NCBI GenBank assembly: GCA_000320545.1
Contig: ADNK01001701.1
Span: forward strand, 62,001-126,000
Direction: 5' to 3'
Source of the DNA: Bigelowiella natans CCMP2755
Taxonomy: Eukaryota > Protista > Cercozoa
DNA: 64,000 nt
Shown here: piece by piece, positions 1,709 to 46,560 of the stretch
Layout of the letters: every line of letters starts with the position of its first letter
Numbering within the stretch: the stretch's first letter is position 1
Translations under genes and position numbers: made by a program
Notes under the pieces: generated by a model
What the model was told of the DNA's origin: nothing
Seen by the model: the letters and a program-made list of their open reading frames with translations, nothing else
Database searches by the model: none

Positions 1709-1949
1709 TGTCTTGGTTTTTTTTGCAAAAAGTGGTATTTTCGCCTTAATTTACGACGAAATGGGACCCAATTAAAGGATATCTGTCGATCATTGCTCGG
1801 CAATCAGCGACCTCAATCATTCGGTGAGTCCTCTGCTCTGCTTGCAGCTCAAGGCCATCAAGTTTCTTTCTTTCTTTCGAAGCACTGCGTTTCGCACTTT
1901 GCAAGGGCCATGCAACACTTTGGAGATGTGGCCTACAACGTTTATTTCT

Positions 1950-2800
1950 TTCATCACTTCATCGCAGGTTCTTTTCGAAAGCTAGTCGCATGCACTGGTG
2001 AAGGTTGAGCGCTTCGCATCGCTAGGTCGTTGCACCTCACAGGAAAAAGCGTTTGCGTGCAATGATCCTGCCAAAGAGGAGAGAAAAAGAAGTGTTCCAG
2101 CAGCGCCGAAACTGATGTGCCCGCCCGAGAAGGGAAGTTGTGGTTTGAGTGGTGCACGTTGGAACGAAGCACGAAGCATGTGCCCAGCAGCAGCTCTTGA
2201 GCTAGCCACAGCTAGCTAGCCAGGCGTGCACACCGACAATGTTCTTTTTCGCAATCAAACCGTTTGGACCACGTGTTCAAGTGTTAGGCAAGAAGACCTT
2301 CAATCCAAGTTTGCATCGACTTGCCGAACACCTGTCTAGCTAGCTAGCGCTGGAGCGCCACAGCCAGCTGTGCGCCTGCATGTTGGACTGGCGGCTAGCT
2401 GGCTGATGCGATGCAATGCAAGCGACGACAGCATCGCACACAGCACTAGCTAGTTAGAGCACTAGCAGAGCAGGCGGTGCGATCAACTCTAGAACTGCTG
2501 CCCGCACAGAGGTTCTCATTTGCACGTCTAACTGGACGCGGCAATGTCTAGTTGTGCTTGCTAGCTTGATGACTGCAACGACGAAAAGTTCGAACGTTCT
2601 AGCGTCGTGAGCCTGAACGTTGCGTTGCGCTTTCATCAAGCATGCTCGCGCTGCTGAATCCACAATGTGCATTGACATGGTGTGTCCACAGCGCATCCGC
2701 CAGCAGCACATTTCACAAAGATAGTCGTTGCCGACCCGAGGTACAGTTCCATGTCGCATAGCTTTTCCCAATGTTGCTAGCTGCACAACTCAGGCGCAAC
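1950..2800. other. TpA-depleted, CTAG-rich intergenic island 1
   Basis: Long runs without TA; remaining TA mostly in gctagctagc; TG/CA/GC-rich. Confidence 0.8.
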
Positions 2801-18729: not shown

Positions 18730-19830
18730 CATGCGGTCGAGTAATCCGCGATGTACGTCGCAAAAGCTACCTAAAAAAGATGCTATGTGTAGGATCATGT
18801 GCTGCCATGCACACACAACCGTACACAAAACCGCATGCATGCCACACAATCACCGCATACTGTGCATGCATGCATGCGTCTAGACATGTGTAATGTGCAC
18901 TAACTGTCACAAGTATCCCCCAAGCTAGCAAGTAACACGTCTAATACGATGTAGACCTAGAGACGTGCGCTTGCTTGCATGTACATGTGCATACACACAC
19001 ATGATGGCTTGTTAAATGATACTAGATTGATGATTGAATGCGCTATCTAGTCATGTTGATTGGCTTCACACCGCAATATACTCGTCGCGAAAAATGGACA
19101 AAAAATTGTCTAGATTGTTGCGCGCATGCATGCACCACTGGACTAGCTAGCAGGTGTGTCACACTGGCATGCGAGCGTCACATCCAGATAAGGACACACT
19201 GCTAAACGATCGCGTAGCACACAGGCTGTCGTTCTAGCGTTGGTGAGGATGCGATCACGAATCACGAAAACAACAGTCTGTGTCCATTCATGCAGGTAGC
19301 CAGCAAACTGTGCCGCTTGTGCATGTCCAAATGAATGCAGCTAGGCATGCATGTGTGATCGAACATGCATGCAACGCTCAAATCTGTGGATTTCACTAGT
19401 TTGCATGTGGGGTTGCATCGAACGGCTCTGCCGAGCACCAGAGCACGTGAGGCACACTGGCGCAAAATGGCGCAGCTGCACACAGCTATAATGGGCAGGC
19501 TAGCAGGGGCACAGGTGATTGTCATGCTGCATCGCATCCCATGGGCATCCACAGCGCTGCAACGCACCAGCTAGCGCATTAGAACTCATTGTATGTATCC
19601 CTAGCTCGAGTTCCAATTGCATAGCGTCCAGCATGTCATTCGTTCGTTGCTTATTTCTGGCTGCAGTACGTTTTGTGGCATGTCGTGAGTGTAGCACATG
19701 TTGTACCCATCAATGCGCTAAACTAGCTGAGCTAGAGTCCCTACGAAATTTCGAGTTAAATTGGACGTAGGTCAAGAGACTTGTCAGTTCATGTGATGCA
19801 TGCACCATGCACCATACATTTCTCGTTGTG
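18730..19830. other. TpA-depleted, CTAG-rich intergenic island 3
   Basis: Core at about 19120-19580 is dominated by tgca/catg/gctagc with few non-CTAG TA. Confidence 0.8.
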
Positions 19831-24897: not shown

Positions 24898-25509
24898 GCA
24901 AGTGGTACTGCTACTTTATTATTGCGGTTCTACACCGTCTGTCATTATCAACAACCAATCAATGTTTTCTTTGTTTATTAGTTTTATCAGCTTGACCTTG
25001 ACAACAGCATGCAACACACAAATGACAAAACACAAAGAAAACTTTTGTTTCACATTATAACTTATATCAATACTGCTGCTACTACTACTACTACTACTGC
25101 TGCTACCCTGACCCACGATTCCCTTGAAAACCATAACCCAGTGCAAATCCCAGACGCATTCCGAAGTGCAGAGACGGTGTCGCAATGTTCGCGTACACTT
25201 GCTGACGTCGTGAGACGTAGAGGCGTAGTTGCAGCTTGCACGGTAGTCCCCCGCAGTCAAATACATTTCCCTACATCCTGGCAGGACGCTTCGAATAACA
25301 TCAATTTTGATGGGATTGTATTTCAAGTTGAGCAAAGATACGGTAAGCGTGTCATCTTCTTGCCGCATCTTCCACCTGGCACCACGCTGTTCAACAATAC
25401 TGAAGAGATGGCTAACGGGCAGGAGGAGGGCCAGCAGGAAGAGATTACTGATGCATTAGAGATGGATGAGGAAGAATATGCCCTCCACTCTGTTTGGGAT
25501 CTACTTTGA
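22327..25509 (+). CDS. TPR-containing hypothetical protein (multi-exon)
   Basis: YLKAAVSYTRALEQ..IRSNRVMALMKAGLFSKALQDCDIIL..PDHFKTLYRKG is a typical TPR pair. The 5' exons and start codon are uncertain. Confidence 0.65.
22731..22780. repeat. (AT)n microsatellite, representative of many intronic or UTR SSRs (e.g. 8292-8328, 55433-55477; (GTA)n 9068-9097; (AG)n 44878-44912; (TG)n 44108-44140)
   Basis: Directly visible perfect repeats. Confidence 0.95.
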
Positions 25510-26259
25510 TTTACATATGAGTAGAGCAAGTTAGATAACCAGTGCATTTGTTTGATGATGCCTCGCTACTTCGTCGAAACATCCATACCTAAACATGCTG
25601 TCATGTTGCACATTGCATGGCGTCAGCGTGTGAAATGTTGTGCTTGCTAGCTTGTGTGTTGTGCCGCCACTAGGATCAACGGATTAATAAGTCAAACATG
25701 CGCACGCTAGCGTACACAATCTTCACCACAATCAATCACATTGACATGATGACTCACAACTATACTGACTAAATGACCATTTCCACATTCGTGCGTGCGT
25801 GTCCGTCTCTAGCTCTAGAGCTAGCAAGACGTGCATGCGGACATCGATGACAATCTAGAAGTGTTCAGCTTCATTGCATGTGCCAAAACAACCACTGTGG
25901 CTGTGGCATGCATGCGCAGTGTGGCAGTCATGGATGTTTGCCTTGCTCGTTGACTTGACAATCTAGCAGTGCTGCTAGCAATGCCAATCATCAGGGCTCT
26001 GGGCTAGCCATGGGGCTCGCTAGCTAGCTAGCTTGCTGCAGGCCCACTAGCCCAGCTCTTGAGAGAGCCAGAGGCGCGCTAGCACGGCAGCGCTGGGCCT
26101 TTGCTTGCTGGCATTGGTGCGAATGGTTTTTGCCAATGACTTGAATGATCTGGTTGATGACTAGATGATGTCAGCTAGTCAGCGTCGCAACCTGACAATT
26201 GACGATGCCCATTTGCTGGAGGGCTCTTGATTTTTCCAGACAATGATGGACTTCCAGAC

Positions 26260-29200
26260 TGGAGCTGGGCACAAATGATTTTTTTCATTGTTTGGAAACA
26301 TTTTCATTTTTTCTGAACAAGCACTTGATTTGAACAAGTGATGCCCTCACTCATGTCGCGAAACTGGCACTTGGTTTGTTCAAGTGATGTCAGAACAAGA
26401 AAAAGTGTTTGCAAACACGTTTGCAAACATTTTCCTGTGAAAATTGTTTGCAAACAATTGCGAAACGTTCCCGCGCAGCTCTGGAGCTGCGCGCAAAGGC
26501 ACGACGTGACAGACCAAGTCACAATGTGTGCAAGTGCAACGTGTGACAAAGGAAACAAACAATCGTGCAGACACAACTTCACAACTCACCATGGATTGTG
26601 GACACAGTTGTGGACATTGCACGCACATGGATGCAGCATTGCAACAGCATGCATGCTCAGTGCTCAGCACTCAGCCCCACAGACTCAGAAACTGTTTTTC
26701 TCCACTTTTGAACCTCCAGCTGTGTCTTTCTCTTGTTTGAGAACTTTCCAAAGTCTGTCCAACTTTGACGATTTGTTGAGCATCGCATCAATGCTTCAAC
26801 TTTGTCTGTCGACAATGCACTTCGACACGCTGTCAGCACCAAGCCTGCACAAAGCCACACAACGAGAAGATGCGTTCGGACTCGACTGACGTGGCTGGTG
26901 TGGACAAGTGGTGTCTAGCAACAACTGCCAAACTGGGAAAGTTCTTGTGATGCTTTCTCCACCAATCAAAGACGTCCAGATTTGTGACCCCGCAGGCTTC
27001 AGTTCTCGCCATGGTTTTCTCACAACTTTCAAATTCCACTCTGGCTTTGGCGAGCGCACCTTCATTGTCTTCGTCATTGAAGTTGCTGATCGAACAATCA
27101 TCTTCGGACACGCTGTCCGATTTGCAAGTCGCCAATGCCAGTTCCAGCTCAGATGCCTTTGATGAGCTCGCGCAACCACTCTCTTCCTCGGCAACGTCAA
27201 TTGACTTTTGGCGTTGCAATGACTCTTCACGTTGCTTGGCCTCAACACGTTCAGCTTTGAGCACCTCTTCAACTTGCTCGATGAGCTTCAAGTGAATTGC
27301 TTTTCTTGCTTCCTCACCAGGTGCAAACTTGAGTTTGTGTCGACGCGGATCCAAGCGGGCAGCGATCAGAACTTCAGGTTTCCCGATTCTGATTTTCCAA
27401 GAACGTTCCATGCTGGCATGCCCTTTGCTGAGGACAGTGCAAGTCTTCGAGCATCGCTTCTGTCTGCACCTGTGCCAGCGGATGCAGCTCTCAACTTCAA
27501 AGTTGCTGCCATCCACAACGGTGCTGCGACGCTGAGTGCAACAAGTTTCACAGAACACAACACGTCGGTCGTCAGCTTCAGTGGTTGAAGGCACTTTGTG
27601 AGCTGAGCGATCAGTTCCCGTGTCTGCGGAGAAATTGACATTCTTGAAATTTTTGACTTGCTCGTCGAAAGAACTTTGCCGATGTGAGATCTCAGGGTGC
27701 ACGCACGTTGCAACACGTCGTGAGTTGAGTTCCACCGCGTCGGGACGTCAATTGGCAATTTCAATGCTTCGCTGTGGGCATCATTGGCACCTGCACCAGG
27801 TTGCTGAGACTTCATGAACTCTGCAGTGGCTTTGTTGCTTCTTCTGAAGTGTGTGCAGACTTGCCGCACCCGCTTGATTGCAATTTCAATTGACAATCCA
27901 GCGTTTGCAAGTTCGTTGACAGCGTGGTCGCTGAGGCAACCTCCATCATCGTCTCCACCAACCAACATCGAAGGGTCAGAAGTTGTGTCTTGGTCAACAA
28001 ACGTTGATTCCAACTGAGATTCTTCCTGATCGATGACACCCACTTCTCCCGTGGGTGCTGACAATTTTGTCGGCCAGAGCAGCTTCAACGACGAGATTCA
28101 GACAACGAGCAGCGCAACTGAGACATTGCTTTGTGTCGTGATCCCTTTTTGGAAGCTCACAAGCTTCAGTTGCATCACTCCCGTTGTCCCTTGTGATGGT
28201 GAGTGTCTTCTCCGCATTCATCAACTTTTGAACAGGCAGAAGCTCGTCTCGAACGTTTTTGGCCAACCTTTCAGCAGTCTTGGATCCTCGGAGAGCCTTG
28301 ATTGATGTGGGAAGCATCCTCAGCTCAAACTCTGCGGTGAGACGTTGTGCTGTCATGCTCTCAAACTCGTCCTGCGCTCTGGAGGACCAGCGCCATCAGT
28401 CGTCAAAGCGATTGAACCTCCTTTCACTTTGGACAATTCCGCTGCTGTCACCTTCCTTGCAAGAGTGAACTTTGCCACCAGCACCCCTGAAACGTTTCTT
28501 CGTGATGGTGTTTTGAGTTCAGGTGAGAACTTTTCACAAAAGTTCTTGTGTCCAGGTTTTTCCACCATCGATGACGCATTGACGTCGATGATGATCACGT
28601 TTGTTGCTTCATTGGCAAGGTCTGCACTCGACGCTTTGAAGAAATTGCTCATGGTTGACTTGGACCTGGACCTTTTGGGAGCTGTGAACAAAGGTTTTGA
28701 TCAAAAAAAGGCTCCACTCAACGACATCAATGAACCCAAAGGATTTGAACCTGTGCTTTGCTTTTCTTTGTGGTGTGTCCTGGTCAGGTGGCTTGCCAGT
28801 GCGTTCGCAGCACCTGACACCTCCTTGTTGCAAGTGTTGCAAACTGCACGCTCTGGTTTCTGCCCTTTCACACTGGTTGCCCACTGCCATGCCCAAGACC
28901 TTCCAACGATCTTTTTGGTTCTCTGTTGACTTTGTTCACAATCTTCGTCTGTGCAATGACCACAAAGAACAAGAATCACGTTGAAGTTGACATTGACCAT
29001 GATGGCAAACAGGACACGTGGAAAAGTTCAACGTGTCAAACCTTCTTCTTCGACACCCGATGAGCTGGGATTCTGTCGGTCTTTGGATTCAAAATTGGGC
29101 TGTTCGTCAATGACAAGACTTTCTTTGACGTTTGCTGCACGAATGACGTCTCCTCCTTCTCCCGGATGCACGTCCAAAGGCGCTGGTGCGAAGTCAACTC

Positions 29201-29769
29201 CCTCTTCAGCACTCAGCTCACGAGGTGCAAATTCCAAAAACGTTCGTTCTTGACAGTCGACCAGGTGATCAACAAGCTCAGCTTCAGTTTTCCCACGGAT
29301 GTCAGCTTCTGAAAGTTTTCCTTCTCCTTCAATCCTGCTGGCAAGTGTTCTGACGTCTTCTGCTGCCATTTGCTCGAGAACGTTGCGTTTCCCAGGCTTC
29401 CTCGACGATTTTCTTCGCGGAGCAAGACTTTCGTTGATGGGTGTTTGCCTTTTCTTGCTCCTGGTGCATCGTTTCGTTGGGCAAATGCAAGCTGGCAAGT
29501 GGATTTCTCTGCGAGGTTCACCAAGTGGCGTTCGCTTGGGACCAAAACTGAGAAAAAAGTTGAGACGAAAATTTTCGAAACAAGCCGTTTTGAAGTGGTT
29601 CAATGGGCAATTTTTCTTCAGAAGTTCACTGACAAAACTTGTGTTTGGTTTGTTCAAGTGCTGCTCGAGCTCGTGGAAACAAGCTGGCAAGCACTTGATT
29701 TGAACAAGTGTTGTTTGTTCAAGTGTGTTTGCAAGTGTGTTTGTTTTCAAGCACTTGTGCCCAGCGCTG
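26260..29769 (-). mobile_element. Full-length hAT-superfamily DNA transposon (degenerate)
   Basis: Imperfect 18-bp TIRs: left TGGAGCTGGGCACAAATG, right (reverse complement) CAGCGCTGGGCACAAGTG. Perfect 8-bp TSD TTCCAGAC at 26252-26259 and 29770-29777. Subterminal repeat caagcacttgatttgaacaagtg near both ends; tgtttgcaa motifs. Confidence 0.93.
26833..29370 (-). pseudogene. hAT transposase, frameshifted and hypermutated
   Basis: BED finger (W..A..AVCNTC..LASHLTRTH), LTTDG, DNGS, CAARCLNL, DVPTRWNST, LDPR, and dimerisation domain WWRKHHKNFPSLAVVARHHLSTPATSVESERIFS. Spread over several frames; no Tyr codons. Confidence 0.9.
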
Positions 29770-31185
29770 TTCCAGACTTGCCAGCTTGACCAAGCTGGCA
29801 AGTGACACGTTGCACGTCCATCACCCAGTTGAGCAGCTTTGCAATCGCACCTCCAGACCTCTGGACCTGGCGTGTCTGGCCAGCTGGGTGTCACTGCAGC
29901 GCTCCAGCGCTGCGCGAGTGCGTCGCAGTCCAGCAGTGACTGGCACGTGCACTGGCTGGGTGAGCTCAACGTGATGAGCTGCAGCGTTTGCCACTCCAGC
30001 ACTCTTGGCAAGCATGTTTGGATGAACGTGCGGCAACGTCAGTGTCGTGCAAGCACTTGGCACTTGCAAGTGATTTTTCAAAACGTTCGCGTTTGTTCAA
30101 ACCAAACCAAATCAAACGTGTTTGCAAACACTCTTGGAAACTCTTCAAGAAAGTCACAAAAATTGAGCTTTTTGATGCGTCCATGGCATGGCCAATTCTA
30201 GCAATTGCTGGAATTGTCACCGATGTTGCCAGCCAAGTTTGAGATCGCCTGAGTTTGCGCAGGGGCAGTTGACGCAGCCAGCGTTGCTGGGTTGGAGCGC
30301 GATGATGACCGCCGCTCACACATTGATTGGACGGTCCAGACCAGTGGACGATGGGTTTTGTGGATGTTGCATGCTCTGGTGCTCAAACCTTTCTGGTCTG
30401 GTGGTCAGCACACAAAAGCAGCTGCCATGTTGCCCATTGGAACCCATTCCAGTGGGACAAGTGCACGTGTCTAGATGTGCATGACCAATGACGACTTCAC
30501 GTTGCGGAGGGATGGGGTGTTGGATTCGCTGCCATTTCCAGATTTGTTTGCACAGCCTGCAGTGCAACTCGGTAGCTTGTGTGTGATTTTCAGATGTGCA
30601 CCCTCTCATCAATGAATCAACGTGCTGAGCTCAGAGCATGCATTGTTTTCCTCGGGCATCGTGTCACAGGAACTCCATGTGCTGGATGTAATCATCTTTG
30701 ACATTTGTGATGTTCGTGTGAGTAACTGGGCGACGAGTTGCAATGTTCATATTTGAATGAATAATTTCTAGTCCTAACTCTTTGATAATCCGTGACACTT
30801 CGTTTAAGGCTACTAAAAACATGATAACAATAAAATAATGCATTGCAATAATGCTTCTATTATGTAAGTCAATTATCTAATCTCATTTCTGAGTTTTATT
30901 TCAGCGTGATGAAGCACTGTCGAAGTAATCAAGATGATGCTTCATAATTTCTTCATCGTTCTAATAAAGAGAAATGGGTTTTTATTAGAAGTACGTTCAT
31001 TCACCAAGCAAGTTACAAGGATATCGTAATTTGAGCAAATGTGGAAATGAAGTGAAAACGAATTAAATTGCTTGATGTATGCATGTACCATCTCATCCCT
31101 TGAAGGAAATTTATCATCATTGAATAACCCACTGCTTGGTTCCTGACGAAAATATCTTACTTTTAAGAAACCCTGTTTCATGAAA

Positions 31186-45239: not shown

Positions 45240-46560
45240 CAACTTCGTTTAAGTAAAGCTTTATGTCGATCATGGGCGCATGCAACGACAAAAAACTGAG
45301 GAACGATATCATTATTTCGCATTCTTGAATTAGAGCTGGTAGAGCCGCCATTACAGGCATCCAAAGCGCATGTTATTGCATGCACGTTGCATTGCCAAAA
45401 TCTCTGGTCTGGCACAGCAGTCTAGCAGTGTTCGCACGGCGAGCACTAGCTAGAGCACGACTGTCTTGCATTCGAAGTGCAATTCTTGAGCAAGCTAGAG
45501 GGCAAATGTGAGAAAAAAGAGCGATGCAAAGAGAATTGTGCAGTCTGGCGGTGCTTTGTACAGTGATACATCGTAGCTACATAGTGAACAGTCTAGCTAG
45601 CAGTGTTAGTGATCACAATGGAAATGGTATAAACTCAGCTATGCTTTATTAGTCGCAGGAAGGATGCCTGCAGATATATCTGTATATGCATTGGTTCATC
45701 ATTGGTTCATAAGTTGTATAAACTCGCATCGATCTTGCATTGTATTGTTATTTGAAATTGTGAAAAAGAAGCGAGCCTAATTTATTAGAATCATAAAATA
45801 GATCGCTGCGTTTCAATGCAGCGTGCCAACAATTACTTGTATATTGTTAGTGTGTCTTGCACACGGCACCTGCCAGCCTAGTTAGTTAGCATCGCAGCCT
45901 AGCTGCGAGCAATGTGCCCACATGCATGGAGTCAAGTTGTTGCACTACTTGTTTGATGACAACGTACGCGCACACTATAACACGCGCACTTGACAACAAA
46001 AGTAAAGAAGCAGTTTTTCTAGCTTAGCGATTCGCATCGTCGATCGAGCTTCACAAATTGCATGGTAACATTTTGACAATGTGAAGCGCCATCGTGGCAA
46101 ACTAGCAAATCGCGTATATAGCCCAATAAGGCTATATAGAGCGTACCGGGTTTTAGGCACATATGTTCCCTGAGACATATGTGGTTCATATATCATATGT
46201 AGCGAAGAACATGTGTGTGGAACTACATATATATGTTCGCACGTGTGTACGCTATATAGCCCTATAAGGCTATATAGACGCGTGTTGCAGTGTAGGCTAG
46301 CAGGCTAGTTTCTGCCGGACCACTAAAGAAGTGGTATCCATCACCTGCCGCAGGCGTGCACATCCTTGGTGCTCCAGCACTTGGCTGTTTGCGGTGTTCG
46401 ATGTGGCATGTGGTCGAATTTGAGATTTATGCTGCAGTGGAAGTGCAAACTGCACACGATGCATGTGCATGCACATGCACACGTATCGTACGTGTCAGGG
46501 CGCGCACATCGCAGCACTAGAGCGGACTTCAGATTATTGTCCATGTCAGTACTTGACACT
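45240..46560. other. TpA-reduced, CTAG-rich intergenic island 6 (patchy)
   Basis: tgca/gcac/ctagctag-rich tracts at about 45340-45620 and 46290-46560. Confidence 0.65.
46111..46282. repeat. ~170-bp element with hairpin arms (MITE-like)
   Basis: tatatagccc(a/t)ataaggctatataga at 46115-46140 and 46253-46278, with inverted flanks cgcg..gcgtac / gtacgc..cgcg. Confidence 0.6.

What the first reader, a model, noticed from the sequence alone, without database searches (positions are those of the whole stretch)
26260..29769. Internal evidence for mutation direction: transposase motifs, TIR ends and palindromes
Seen, against established hAT motifs: TRWNSTY.ML reads TRWNSTHDVL, AR.YLSIPA reads ARHHLSTPA, DNGSN reads DNGSD, and C.AH.LNL reads CAARCLNL. 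All are explicable by T->C/A->G, and no Tyr codon remains. The two TIRs start TG and CA, each one step from an ancestral TA. The 22-bp palindrome cgcgcagctc-TG-gagctgcgcg (26472-26493) becomes perfect with a central TA. The H->R change (CAT->CGT) suggests some activity outside TA context. Inference: the changes occurred after insertion, on both strands, and inactivated the element.
Basis: partly seen in the sequence, partly recalled or inferred. Interest (0 to 1): 0.85.

Follow-up and report, generated by a model that had tools for sequence, protein, structure and literature searches.

The report
Dead transposon erased by known TA-hypermutation
This is a dead hAT "jumping gene" in the alga Bigelowiella natans whose TA steps were all rewritten to TG or CA by a host hypermutation process that a 2026 preprint already showed by experiment. 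Sister copies prove the direction of change and reveal a second, slower target (AT steps) that the preprint did not report.

Summary
Window 26260-29769 is a 3,510-bp hAT DNA transposon on the minus strand, with 8-bp target-site duplications (TTCCAGAC). It has one TA where about 230 are expected, and that TA lies in a CTAG. The TA-void runs from 25772 to 30572.

Two sister copies in the same genome and 100 outside homologues show TA or Tyr/Ile/Asn/His where this copy has TG/CA or His/Cys, Thr, Asp, Arg. The three copies resolved 122 ancestral TA sites independently, and this copy shows 66 CA and 56 TG, so both strands were hit after the copies separated.

The phenomenon is already known: Mettrop et al., bioRxiv 10.64898/2026.01.13.699255, showed it in mutation-accumulation lines of this species. 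Earlier notes of this scan found the same erasure on other DNA.

Three points go beyond the preprint:
This is a second, slower target, and it is also visible in four events of the preprint's own table.
- CTAG is slow to mutate, not immune.
- TA->TG/CA cannot make stop codons. The reading frame here is broken by indels, not by the hypermutation.

The palindrome argument fails.

The parts
25772..30572 (.). Hypermutated island: no TA except in CTAG (17 CTAG remain, mostly at the edges). TG and CA observed/expected are about 1.5-1.6.
26260..29769 (-). Dead autonomous hAT transposon (copy A), 3,510 bp. It has 1 TA against 230 expected, and ApT observed/expected is 0.60.
26252..26259 (.). Target-site duplication TTCCAGAC (left).
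29770..29777 (.). Target-site duplication TTCCAGAC (right).
26260..26275 (+). Terminal inverted repeat TGGAGCTGGGCACAAA. The family ancestor is TAGRGCTGGGCACAAA, so the first TA is now TG.
29754..29769 (-). Terminal inverted repeat, read on the minus strand as CAGCGCTGGGCACAAG. The first TA is now CA.
28770..28841 (-). BED zinc finger (CNTC...HLTRTHH).
   Evidence: PF02892, 21.2 bits against a cut-off of 20.6
28392..28406 (-). First catalytic Asp motif, LTTDG(W). A 2-bp insertion right after it shifts the frame.
28174..28188 (-). Second catalytic Asp motif, DNGSD. The last residue was Asn (AGT AAT -> AGT GAT, a TpA hit across the codon border).
28093..28116 (-). CAARCLNL. The invariant His is now Arg (CAT -> CGT, an ApT-type A->G).
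27711..27740 (-). TRWNSTHDVL. The His (CAC) and Val (GTG) are shared by all three long copies.
26863..26919 (-). ARHHLSTPATSVESERIFS: hAT dimerisation domain with the catalytic Glu. It contains Tyr->His and Ile->Thr changes and the element's only TA (CTAG at 26915-26918).
26472..26493 (.). 22-bp near-palindrome, made by an 8-bp insertion specific to this copy into the family's 14-bp palindrome CGCGCAGCTGCGCG.
30048..30259 (+). Fragment D: a piece of a second element of the same family, in the opposite orientation. It is also TA-free and ApT-depleted.
25772..26251 (.). Left flank. The query 25500-26252 matched nothing else in this genome, yet this stretch is free of TA except CTAG. ApT is not depleted here.

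Best explanation
The stretch is a dead copy of an autonomous hAT DNA transposon in the nuclear genome of the chlorarachniophyte alga Bigelowiella natans. After it inserted, the host's regional hypermutation process converted A:T pairs to G:C at every TpA, on either strand at random, giving TpG or CpA. That process was shown by experiment in this species by Mettrop et al. 2026.

The process acted on a domain, not on the repeat alone. It reaches about 0.5 kb into the left flank, which has no other match in the genome, and it covers a neighbouring fragment of a second copy.

Its rate depends on the neighbouring bases:
- It is fastest where TA is flanked by A or T.
- It is about tenfold or more slower with a G or C flank.
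- It is slowest in CTAG.

Most CTAG inside the element were then lost, and about a third to a half of all ApT were converted to GpT or ApC.

Because TA->TG/CA cannot make a stop codon, the process damages proteins only by missense: every Tyr is lost, plus changes such as Ile->Thr/Met and Asn->Asp, and the ApT changes His->Arg, Asp->Gly and Met->Thr/Val. The open frame of this copy was broken separately, by small indels.

Shown: the direction, the context rules, independence between copies, strand symmetry, and the ApT class. Inferred: that the chemistry is deamination of adenine to hypoxanthine in DNA by an ADAT2/TadA-like enzyme (the preprint's proposal), that the ApT changes come from the same enzyme, and that targeting follows a silent-chromatin or small-RNA mark.
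For: hAT identity:
- 8-bp TSD and TIRs.
- zf-BED and Dimer_Tnp_hAT domains.
- Sister copy B has a 662-codon open frame that matches 11,049 proteins and the Hermes transposase. The D, D, E, C..H and RW residues line up.

TA loss:
- 1 TA against 230 expected; the void spans 25772-30572.

Direction and independence:
- Where copies B or C keep TA, this copy has TG or CA in 32 of 44 aligned sites.
- There are 90 TG/CA discordances among the three copies, with odd-one-out counts of 37/29/24.
- Codon-level cases are checked against 100 outside homologues.
- Strand symmetry is 66 CA to 56 TG; runs test z = 0.26.

ApT class:
- With flanks of 2 bases on each side identical in all three copies, A->G at ApT is 53/183 against 17/670 elsewhere (odds ratio 15.7, p = 2e-24). 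The reverse change is 2/151.
- ApT observed/expected is 0.60 here against 0.94 and 0.97 in B and C.
- Polarised by 13 other copies, this copy keeps 18 of 32 family-majority AT sites while 8 of the 13 others keep at least 89% (range 52-100%).
- Fragment D keeps 6 of 14 against about 86% in nine others.

Context rules:
- Density of each NTAN context in islands relative to background: CTAG 0.83, CTAC 0.13, ATAA 0.006.
- Inside copy A, 4 of 5 CTAG shared by B and C are gone.

Experimental precedent (bioRxiv 10.64898/2026.01.13.699255):
- 230 of 231 mutations in two viral inserts are A:T->G:C, said to be all at TpA.
- Its Table S2 lists 3 T>C at ATG and 1 at ATT, which are ApT, not TpA. Only 20 of 206 TpA events have a G 3' of the A.

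Frame: broken by indels only.

Sequence confirmed by four independent runs.
Against: - No enzyme is identified. TpA and ApT are self-complementary, so A->G cannot be told from T->C on the other strand, and the chemistry stays open.
- The ApT class could be a separate process acting on the same silent DNA.
- With only three long copies, the ApT changes in the coding part are polarised by composition, by outside homologues at a few conserved residues, and by the short copies only for the terminal 650 bp and for fragment D.
- TpA mutation destroys overlapping ApT as a by-product. The general mild ApT deficit of other islands is therefore not independent evidence.
- The left flank matched nothing else in a search that can miss repeats, and it could be an old relic of another foreign element rather than host DNA, so the spread into flanks is not proven.
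- The contigs of the four runs laid show no new change at this locus, so continuing activity here is not shown. No RNA or chromatin data were obtained.
Confidence: 0.85

Rival explanations
1. The pattern and targeting are the same, but the chemistry acts on thymine rather than adenine. Thymine in TpA (and more weakly in ApT) is oxidised or otherwise modified, for example to 5-hydroxymethyl- or 5-formyl-uracil, mispairs with G, and gives T->C.
For: TpA and ApT are palindromic, so every A->G here is equally a T->C on the other strand. From general knowledge, 5-formyluracil causes A:T->G:C transitions, and dinoflagellates place hydroxymethyluracil preferentially at TpA.
Against: A six-frame search of this genome found no Tet/JBP-type oxygenase domain, but the control genomes were silent too, so that blank means little. 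TadA/ADAT enzymes naturally deaminate an A that follows a U, which fits TpA (general knowledge; also argued in the preprint). The preprint reports an ADAT2-like candidate with DNA-editing features.
Confidence: 0.12
2. The ApT changes in this copy are not part of the hypermutation system. They are ordinary transitions, or the product of a second unrelated process (for example loss of N6-methyladenine at ApT), accumulated in an old silent locus.
For: The preprint states that hypermutation occurs only at TpA. Sister copies B and C, almost TA-free, keep normal ApT levels. Only some TA-free islands show strong ApT loss.
Against: The excess is about 12-fold and specific to ApT (29% against 2.5%), with the reverse change at 1.3%. 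The ordinary spectrum of this species is biased towards A:T. The ApT-depleted zone lies inside the TA-free island and covers two separate insertions. In the preprint's own hypermutable viral region, all four A:T->G:C events that are not at TpA are at ApT.
Confidence: 0.2
3. The TG/CA differences between copies come from decay of methylated CpG (CG->TG/CA), and the lack of TA is native to this transposon family.
For: TG against CA at one site is also what independent deamination of an ancestral CG gives. There are 39 sites where this copy has CG and both sister copies have TG or CA.
Against: At 32 sites at least one copy still has TA. Outside homologues have Tyr, Ile and Asn (TA-containing codons or codon borders), not Arg, at the test positions. 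CpG is barely depleted (observed/expected 0.77) while TA is zero. Family termini still read TAG. The experiment shows TpA->TpG/CpA in real time. Many of the 'CG here, TG/CA there' sites are ApT-type changes in this copy, such as CAT->CGT.
Confidence: 0.02
4. The changes were made on RNA (ADAR-like editing of double-stranded transposon RNA) and reached the genome by reverse transcription.
For: ADAR prefers a U before the edited A. Copy A and fragment D lie head to head and could form double-stranded RNA.
Against: This is a cut-and-paste DNA element with intact TSDs and TIRs. The void covers the left flank, which has no other match in the genome, and non-transcribed ends. Both strands are hit equally with no tracts. 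ADAR favours UAG, the context that is spared here. The experiment shows in-place DNA change.
Confidence: 0.01

Closest known systems
TpA hypermutation of integrated viral DNA in Bigelowiella natans (Mettrop et al., bioRxiv 10.64898/2026.01.13.699255, 2026)
   Same: Same species and same signature: A:T->G:C at TpA giving TpG or CpA on either strand, regional, and aimed at foreign DNA. The preprint also reports 124 TpA-depleted clusters and an enrichment of transposase and reverse-transcriptase domains among TpA-poor genes. Its Pfam table lists the hAT dimerisation domain once.
   Different: The preprint follows two viral inserts that still hold many TpA, whereas this is an end-state transposon. 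The main text does not mention CTAG, flanking-base effects, ApT, hAT elements, comparison of copies, or flanks (supplements only partly read). It states that all hypermutation is at TpA, while its Table S2 holds four ApT events.
Repeat-induced point mutation (RIP) of fungi
   Same: A host process that riddles repeated or foreign DNA with transitions in a dinucleotide context, leaks into flanks, and leaves a dinucleotide index as its footprint.
   Different: RIP is C->T (mainly CpA->TpA): it creates TpA, lowers G+C and makes stop codons. Here TpA is destroyed, G+C rises (44% to 48.5%) and no stop can arise. The preprint's hypermutated giant-virus (NCLDV) insert is single-copy, so repetition may not be the trigger.
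APOBEC / ADAR / ADAT-TadA deaminase editing
   Same: Hypermutation of invading nucleic acid by base deamination. TadA/ADAT and ADAR prefer a U/T before the target A.
   Different: APOBEC acts on C. ADAR acts on double-stranded RNA and likes UAG, which is spared here. APOBEC clusters are strand-coordinated, and none are seen here. No enzyme is assigned here.
hAT superfamily transposons (Ac, hobo, Hermes, Tol2)
   Same: 8-bp TSD, short TIR starting TAG/CAG, BED finger, DDE catalytic core with the C..H and RW motifs, and a C-terminal dimerisation domain. Non-autonomous short derivatives are also present.
   Different: About 28-29% identical to the nearest outside proteins. It has a long N-terminal extension. 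All copies seen in this genome are hypermutated.

Membership tests
hAT superfamily DNA transposon | 8-bp target-site duplication | tested here: met
   TTCCAGAC at 26252-26259 and 29770-29777, directly abutting both TIRs.
hAT superfamily DNA transposon | Short terminal inverted repeats beginning TAG/CAG | tested here: met
   The family ends read [TA/TG/CA]GRGCTGGGCACAAA. Eight termini keep TAG. This copy has TGG and CAG.
hAT superfamily DNA transposon | C-terminal hAT dimerisation domain (PF05699) and BED finger | tested here: met
   PF05699 scores 45.3 bits in this copy and 61.8 bits in copy B. zf-BED scores 21.2 bits against a cut-off of 20.6.
hAT superfamily DNA transposon | DDE catalytic residues plus the C..H and RW motifs | tested here: met
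   D of TTDGW, D of RDNGSN, E of SVESERIFS, C..H and TRW align with columns conserved in 98-100% of 100 homologues and with Hermes. In this copy His is Arg and the frame is shifted, so the copy itself is dead.
B. natans TpA hypermutation (Mettrop et al. 2026) | A:T->G:C transitions at TpA giving TpG or CpA | tested here: met
   122 discordant TA-type sites among three copies. TA is retained in sister copies where this copy has TG or CA. Outside homologues agree.
B. natans TpA hypermutation (Mettrop et al. 2026) | Both strands hit | tested here: met
   66 CA and 56 TG, with no run structure.
B. natans TpA hypermutation (Mettrop et al. 2026) | Cluster of at least three 1-kb windows with TpA rho <= 0.43 and CpA+TpG rho >= 1.52 | tested here: inconclusive
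   TA observed/expected is 0-0.14 in four windows. The mean TG/CA value is about 1.67, 1.53, 1.51 and 1.45, so it sits at the edge of the second cut-off. The scaffold names could not be mapped to their cluster list.
B. natans TpA hypermutation (Mettrop et al. 2026) | Mutation confined to TpA | tested here: not met
   There is an added ApT class: 53/183 against 17/670. Four ApT events also appear in the preprint's Table S2. This widens the description of the process rather than excluding membership.
B. natans TpA hypermutation (Mettrop et al. 2026) | New mutations arise in culture at the locus | tested here: inconclusive
   Contigs of four runs show no change in the long pieces. Contigs hide rare variants, and no TpA is left to mutate.
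Fungal RIP | C->T at CpA creating TpA; G+C falls | tested here: not met
   The direction is opposite: TpA is destroyed and G+C rises from 44.4% to 48.5%.

The most novel reading that the evidence does not exclude
The alga's hypermutation enzyme is not strictly TpA-specific. It has a ranked set of targets: TA flanked by A/T is hit far faster than TA flanked by G/C, which in turn is hit faster than CTAG and ApT. The state of CTAG and ApT would then serve as a clock for how long a locus has been marked. Because the process can never make a stop codon, hypermutated transposases stay as long open frames, such as the 662 codons of copy B. These get annotated as genes and could be raw material for new proteins.
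Probability: 0.55. Interest if true: 0.55.

Novelty: new member of a known kind. Interest (0 to 1): 0.42.

Why it matters
The main claim, that a TpA-directed A:T->G:C hypermutation acts on foreign DNA in this alga, is already published as a preprint. This finding is therefore chiefly an independent confirmation from sequence alone, on a transposon family rather than a virus.

Its added value is mechanistic detail that any enzyme candidate must explain:
- Strong dependence on flanking bases.
- Near-exemption of CTAG.
- A second, slower ApT target, which the preprint's own mutation list contains but its text denies.
- Equal, uncoordinated hits on both strands.
- Action over a domain that passes the ends of the element.

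It also warns annotators that TA-free open frames in this genome, such as the public 451-aa model built from this dead copy, are hypermutated relics.

Tried and rejected
The sister copies and 100 outside homologues answer the direction question directly. Frame continuity cannot improve, because TA->TG/CA makes neither stops nor frameshifts. I checked that this copy has no substitution stop in copy B's frame.
- First ApT count: it was inflated by ancestral TAT/ATA sites resolved differently in the copies. I redid it with identical flanks, and the signal became cleaner.
- General ApT deficit of other TA-free islands: rejected as independent support, because TpA mutation removes overlapping ApT.
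- Terminal 215-bp alignment of 22 copies: too few AT sites to test ApT.
- Laying contigs of four runs: no new mutation was seen. The 'other letters' come from short contigs, probably of sister copies. It is only useful as a check of the sequence.
- No RNA run held the stretch, so expression is unknown.
- Tet/JBP domain search: blank, but the controls were silent too, so it is uninformative.
- A_deamin search: one ordinary locus, not followed up.
- The left end of fragment D could not be aligned.
- Literature search for other reports of TpA hypermutation or of hAT elements in chlorarachniophytes: only the one preprint.
Full report
**What is there**

Window 26260-29769 is a 3,510-bp hAT DNA transposon on the minus strand.
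- It is bounded by identical 8-bp target-site duplications, TTCCAGAC (26252-26259 and 29770-29777), and by inverted ends (TGGAGCTGGGCACAAA on the left; CAGCGCTGGGCACAAG read inward on the right).
- Its reading frames hold a BED zinc finger and a hAT dimerisation domain.
- The genome is that of the chlorarachniophyte Bigelowiella natans, according to earlier notes of this scan and the preprint discussed below.
- A search of the whole assembly found two other long copies. Copy B is on contig C2351 and copy C on C2149; they are 85% identical to this copy and 90% identical to each other. There are also dozens of short non-autonomous derivatives that share both ends.
- Copy B keeps a 662-codon open frame. 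That frame matches 11,049 proteins in a 1.8-billion-protein library, the best outside ones at 28-29% identity over the full length, and it matches the Hermes transposase.
- The catalytic D, D and E and the C..H and RW motifs align with columns that are 98-100% conserved in 100 outside homologues.
- A public 451-aa gene model (P0001) is this dead copy spliced round its frameshifts.

**The observation**

- The element has one TA where its base composition predicts 230. That TA sits in a CTAG at 26915-26918.
- Ignoring CTAG, the TA-free tract runs from 25772 to 30572. The next longest TA gap in the 64-kb window is 180 bp.
- TG and CA are at 1.4-1.7 times expectation.
- Contigs from four independent public DNA runs reproduce the stretch, with no difference in all but one of the listed longer pieces (one 282-bp contig of run X15 differs at 8 places), so it is not an assembly artefact.

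**Direction of change**

The sister copies settle this.
- At the AR.Y motif, copy C still reads TAC (Tyr) where this copy and copy B read CAC.
- At the following Ile position this copy reads ACA and the other two read ATG, so the ancestor was ATA.
- At DNGSN this copy reads AGT GAT and copy B reads AGC AAT, so the ancestor was T|A across the codon border.
- At a Tyr conserved in 91 of 100 outside homologues, the three copies read TGT, CAT and TGT.
- Asn of DNGSN is Asn in 93 of 100 homologues, and the His of C..H is His in 100 of 100. Copies B and C have both residues.
- Over the whole alignment, 122 dinucleotide sites are discordant within {TA, TG, CA}. At 32 of them one copy still has TA.
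- The family's termini still begin TAG in eight cases, five of them as CTAG, and TGG or CAG elsewhere.
The differences between this copy and B are 414 transitions to 120 transversions.
- The exception is the His of TRWNSTH. All three copies share it, and 10% of outside homologues have His there, so that case is open.

**Timing and strands**

The three copies resolved their TA sites independently.
- The odd copy at TG/CA-discordant sites is this one 37 times, B 29 times and C 24 times. That is far from what a shared mutated ancestor would give. So most of the change came after the copies had separated, that is, after transposition.
- This copy shows 66 CA and 56 TG outcomes with no run structure (z = 0.26). 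Both strands were hit equally and one site at a time.
- The query 25500-26252, which covers the left flank, matched only itself in the genome search. Yet 25772-26251 is free of TA except for CTAG.
- The right flank holds a fragment (30048-30259) of a second element of the same family in the opposite orientation.
- The process therefore acted on a domain, not on the element alone. I cannot exclude that the left flank is an older relic.

**It is already known**

An earlier follow-up note of this scan pointed to a preprint, which I read.
- Mettrop et al. (bioRxiv 10.64898/2026.01.13.699255) ran mutation-accumulation lines of B. natans. They found two integrated viral regions mutating about 1,000 times faster than the rest of the genome, almost only by A->G and T->C, stated to be always at TpA.
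- They report 124 TpA-poor clusters and an excess of transposase and reverse-transcriptase domains among TpA-poor genes. They propose an ADAT2-like adenine deaminase.
- Their Pfam table lists the hAT dimerisation domain once.
- The phenomenon and its direction are thus published. Earlier notes of this scan also recorded the same erasure on other DNA of this genome.

**What goes beyond the preprint**

- Where copies B and C agree and the two bases on each side are identical in all three copies, this copy has G for A (either strand) at 53 of 183 ApT sites, against 17 of 670 other non-TpA sites (odds ratio 15.7, p = 2e-24). The reverse change occurs at 2 of 151 sites.
- ApT stands at 0.60 of expectation here, against 0.94 and 0.97 in the sister copies and 1.08 in the background.
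- Thirteen other copies polarise the terminal 650 bp. This copy keeps 18 of 32 family-majority AT sites, while 8 of the 13 others keep at least 89% (range 52-100%).
- The neighbouring fragment D keeps 6 of 14, against about 86% in nine others.
- Of 75 amino-acid changes specific to this copy, 31 are of this type, including five His->Arg and five Asp->Gly.
- The preprint's Table S2 lists three T>C at ATG and one at ATT in the giant-virus region. These are ApT, not TpA, and they are the only A:T->G:C events there that are not at TpA. That fits ApT as a target roughly fifty-fold slower per event count. The figure is my estimate.

(b) The rate depends on flanking bases.
- The density of each NTAN context in TA-poor islands, relative to ordinary DNA, is 0.83 for CTAG, 0.13 for CTAC/GTAG, 0.10 for CTAA/TTAG, 0.09 for GTAC, and 0.006-0.04 for contexts flanked by A or T.
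- The preprint's list agrees in having only 20 of 206 TpA events with G after the A.
- CTAG is slow rather than immune. Inside this copy, four of the five CTAG that B and C both keep are gone, and the left end (C|TAG) is now C|TGG.

(c) TA->TG/CA cannot produce TAA, TAG or TGA from a sense codon.
- This copy has no substitution stop in copy B's frame.
- Its frame is broken by indels: +2 at about 28393, a net -5 at about 28060, +8 at about 27421, +11 at about 26856 and +2 at about 26788.

**What fails**

The palindrome argument does not hold.
- Nearly all of the 13 other copies compared carry a 14-bp palindrome, CGCGCAGCTGCGCG.
- This copy has an 8-bp insertion of its own in the middle.
- A central TA would have formed CTAG, the slowest context.
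- TG is also one step from CG.

**Mechanism and rivals**

The most likely mechanism is enzymatic deamination of adenine in DNA, within a marked domain. That is inference.
- TpA and ApT are self-complementary, so chemistry acting on thymine cannot be excluded.
- My search for a Tet/JBP domain was blank but uninformative.
- The ApT class could be a separate process. The points against that are its confinement to the island, its presence in two separate insertions, and the four events in the hypermutable viral region.
- CpG decay, native composition and RNA editing are contradicted by the sites that retain TA, by the outside homologues, and by the flanks and TSDs.

**Limits**
- No raw reads, RNA data or chromatin data were examined for this locus.
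- Only three long copies exist for the coding part.
- I did not build any restored sequence.

Noticed in passing
Preprint 10.64898/2026.01.13.699255, Table S2: Four T>C events in the hypermutable giant-virus region have the context ATG (three) or ATT (one). They are at ApT, not TpA, although the text says all fall on TpA. In the rest of the genome, all four T>C events that are not at TpA also follow an A.
   Followed up: partly
Preprint Table S2: By my hand count of the giant-virus region, A>G in TAG occurs 3 times but the strand-equivalent T>C in CTA occurs 17 times. This is an unexplained strand asymmetry for the G-flanked context only. The other contexts are balanced (TAT 34 / ATA 33, TAA 32 / TTA 35, TAC 22 / GTA 30).
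   Followed up: no
window 1780-2722, 19297-19487, 45374-45559: Smaller patches with no TA except CTAG and raised TG/CA, probably further hypermutated relics.
   Followed up: no
window 26019-26033: A short run of CTAG repeats (GCTAGCTAGCTAGC) in the left flank. All eight TA between 26005 and 26176 are in CTAG.
   Followed up: partly
L005-L012 and other loci (e.g. G000:C435:5187-6808): A family of about 1.6-kb non-autonomous derivatives shares both ends of the hAT element plus a 192-bp segment that copy A has lost. At many terminal TA sites these copies share the CA outcome (about 11 CA to 4 TG), which suggests some copies spread after being partly mutated.
   Followed up: partly
P0001 (public 451-aa protein); window 26836-28317 minus strand: A public gene model is this dead copy, with 'introns' placed over its frameshifts. 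It is 100% identical to three pieces of the element.
   Followed up: yes
window 29778-30047: The 270 bp between copy A and fragment D has the lowest ApT level of the island (observed/expected 0.23 at 29701-30000, 57% G+C). It may be the unrecognisable end of fragment D. Copy A and D lie head to head and could form a hairpin transcript.
   Followed up: partly
run X15, window 26695-26976: One 282-bp contig in one run differs from the reference at 8 places, all but one of those listed being transitions. It is either another copy or a variant allele.
   Followed up: no
G000:C2414:14438-15741: The only locus in the genome with an ADAR/ADAT1-type adenosine deaminase domain (PF02137). One TAG lies inside the match, which is possibly an intron.
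   Followed up: no
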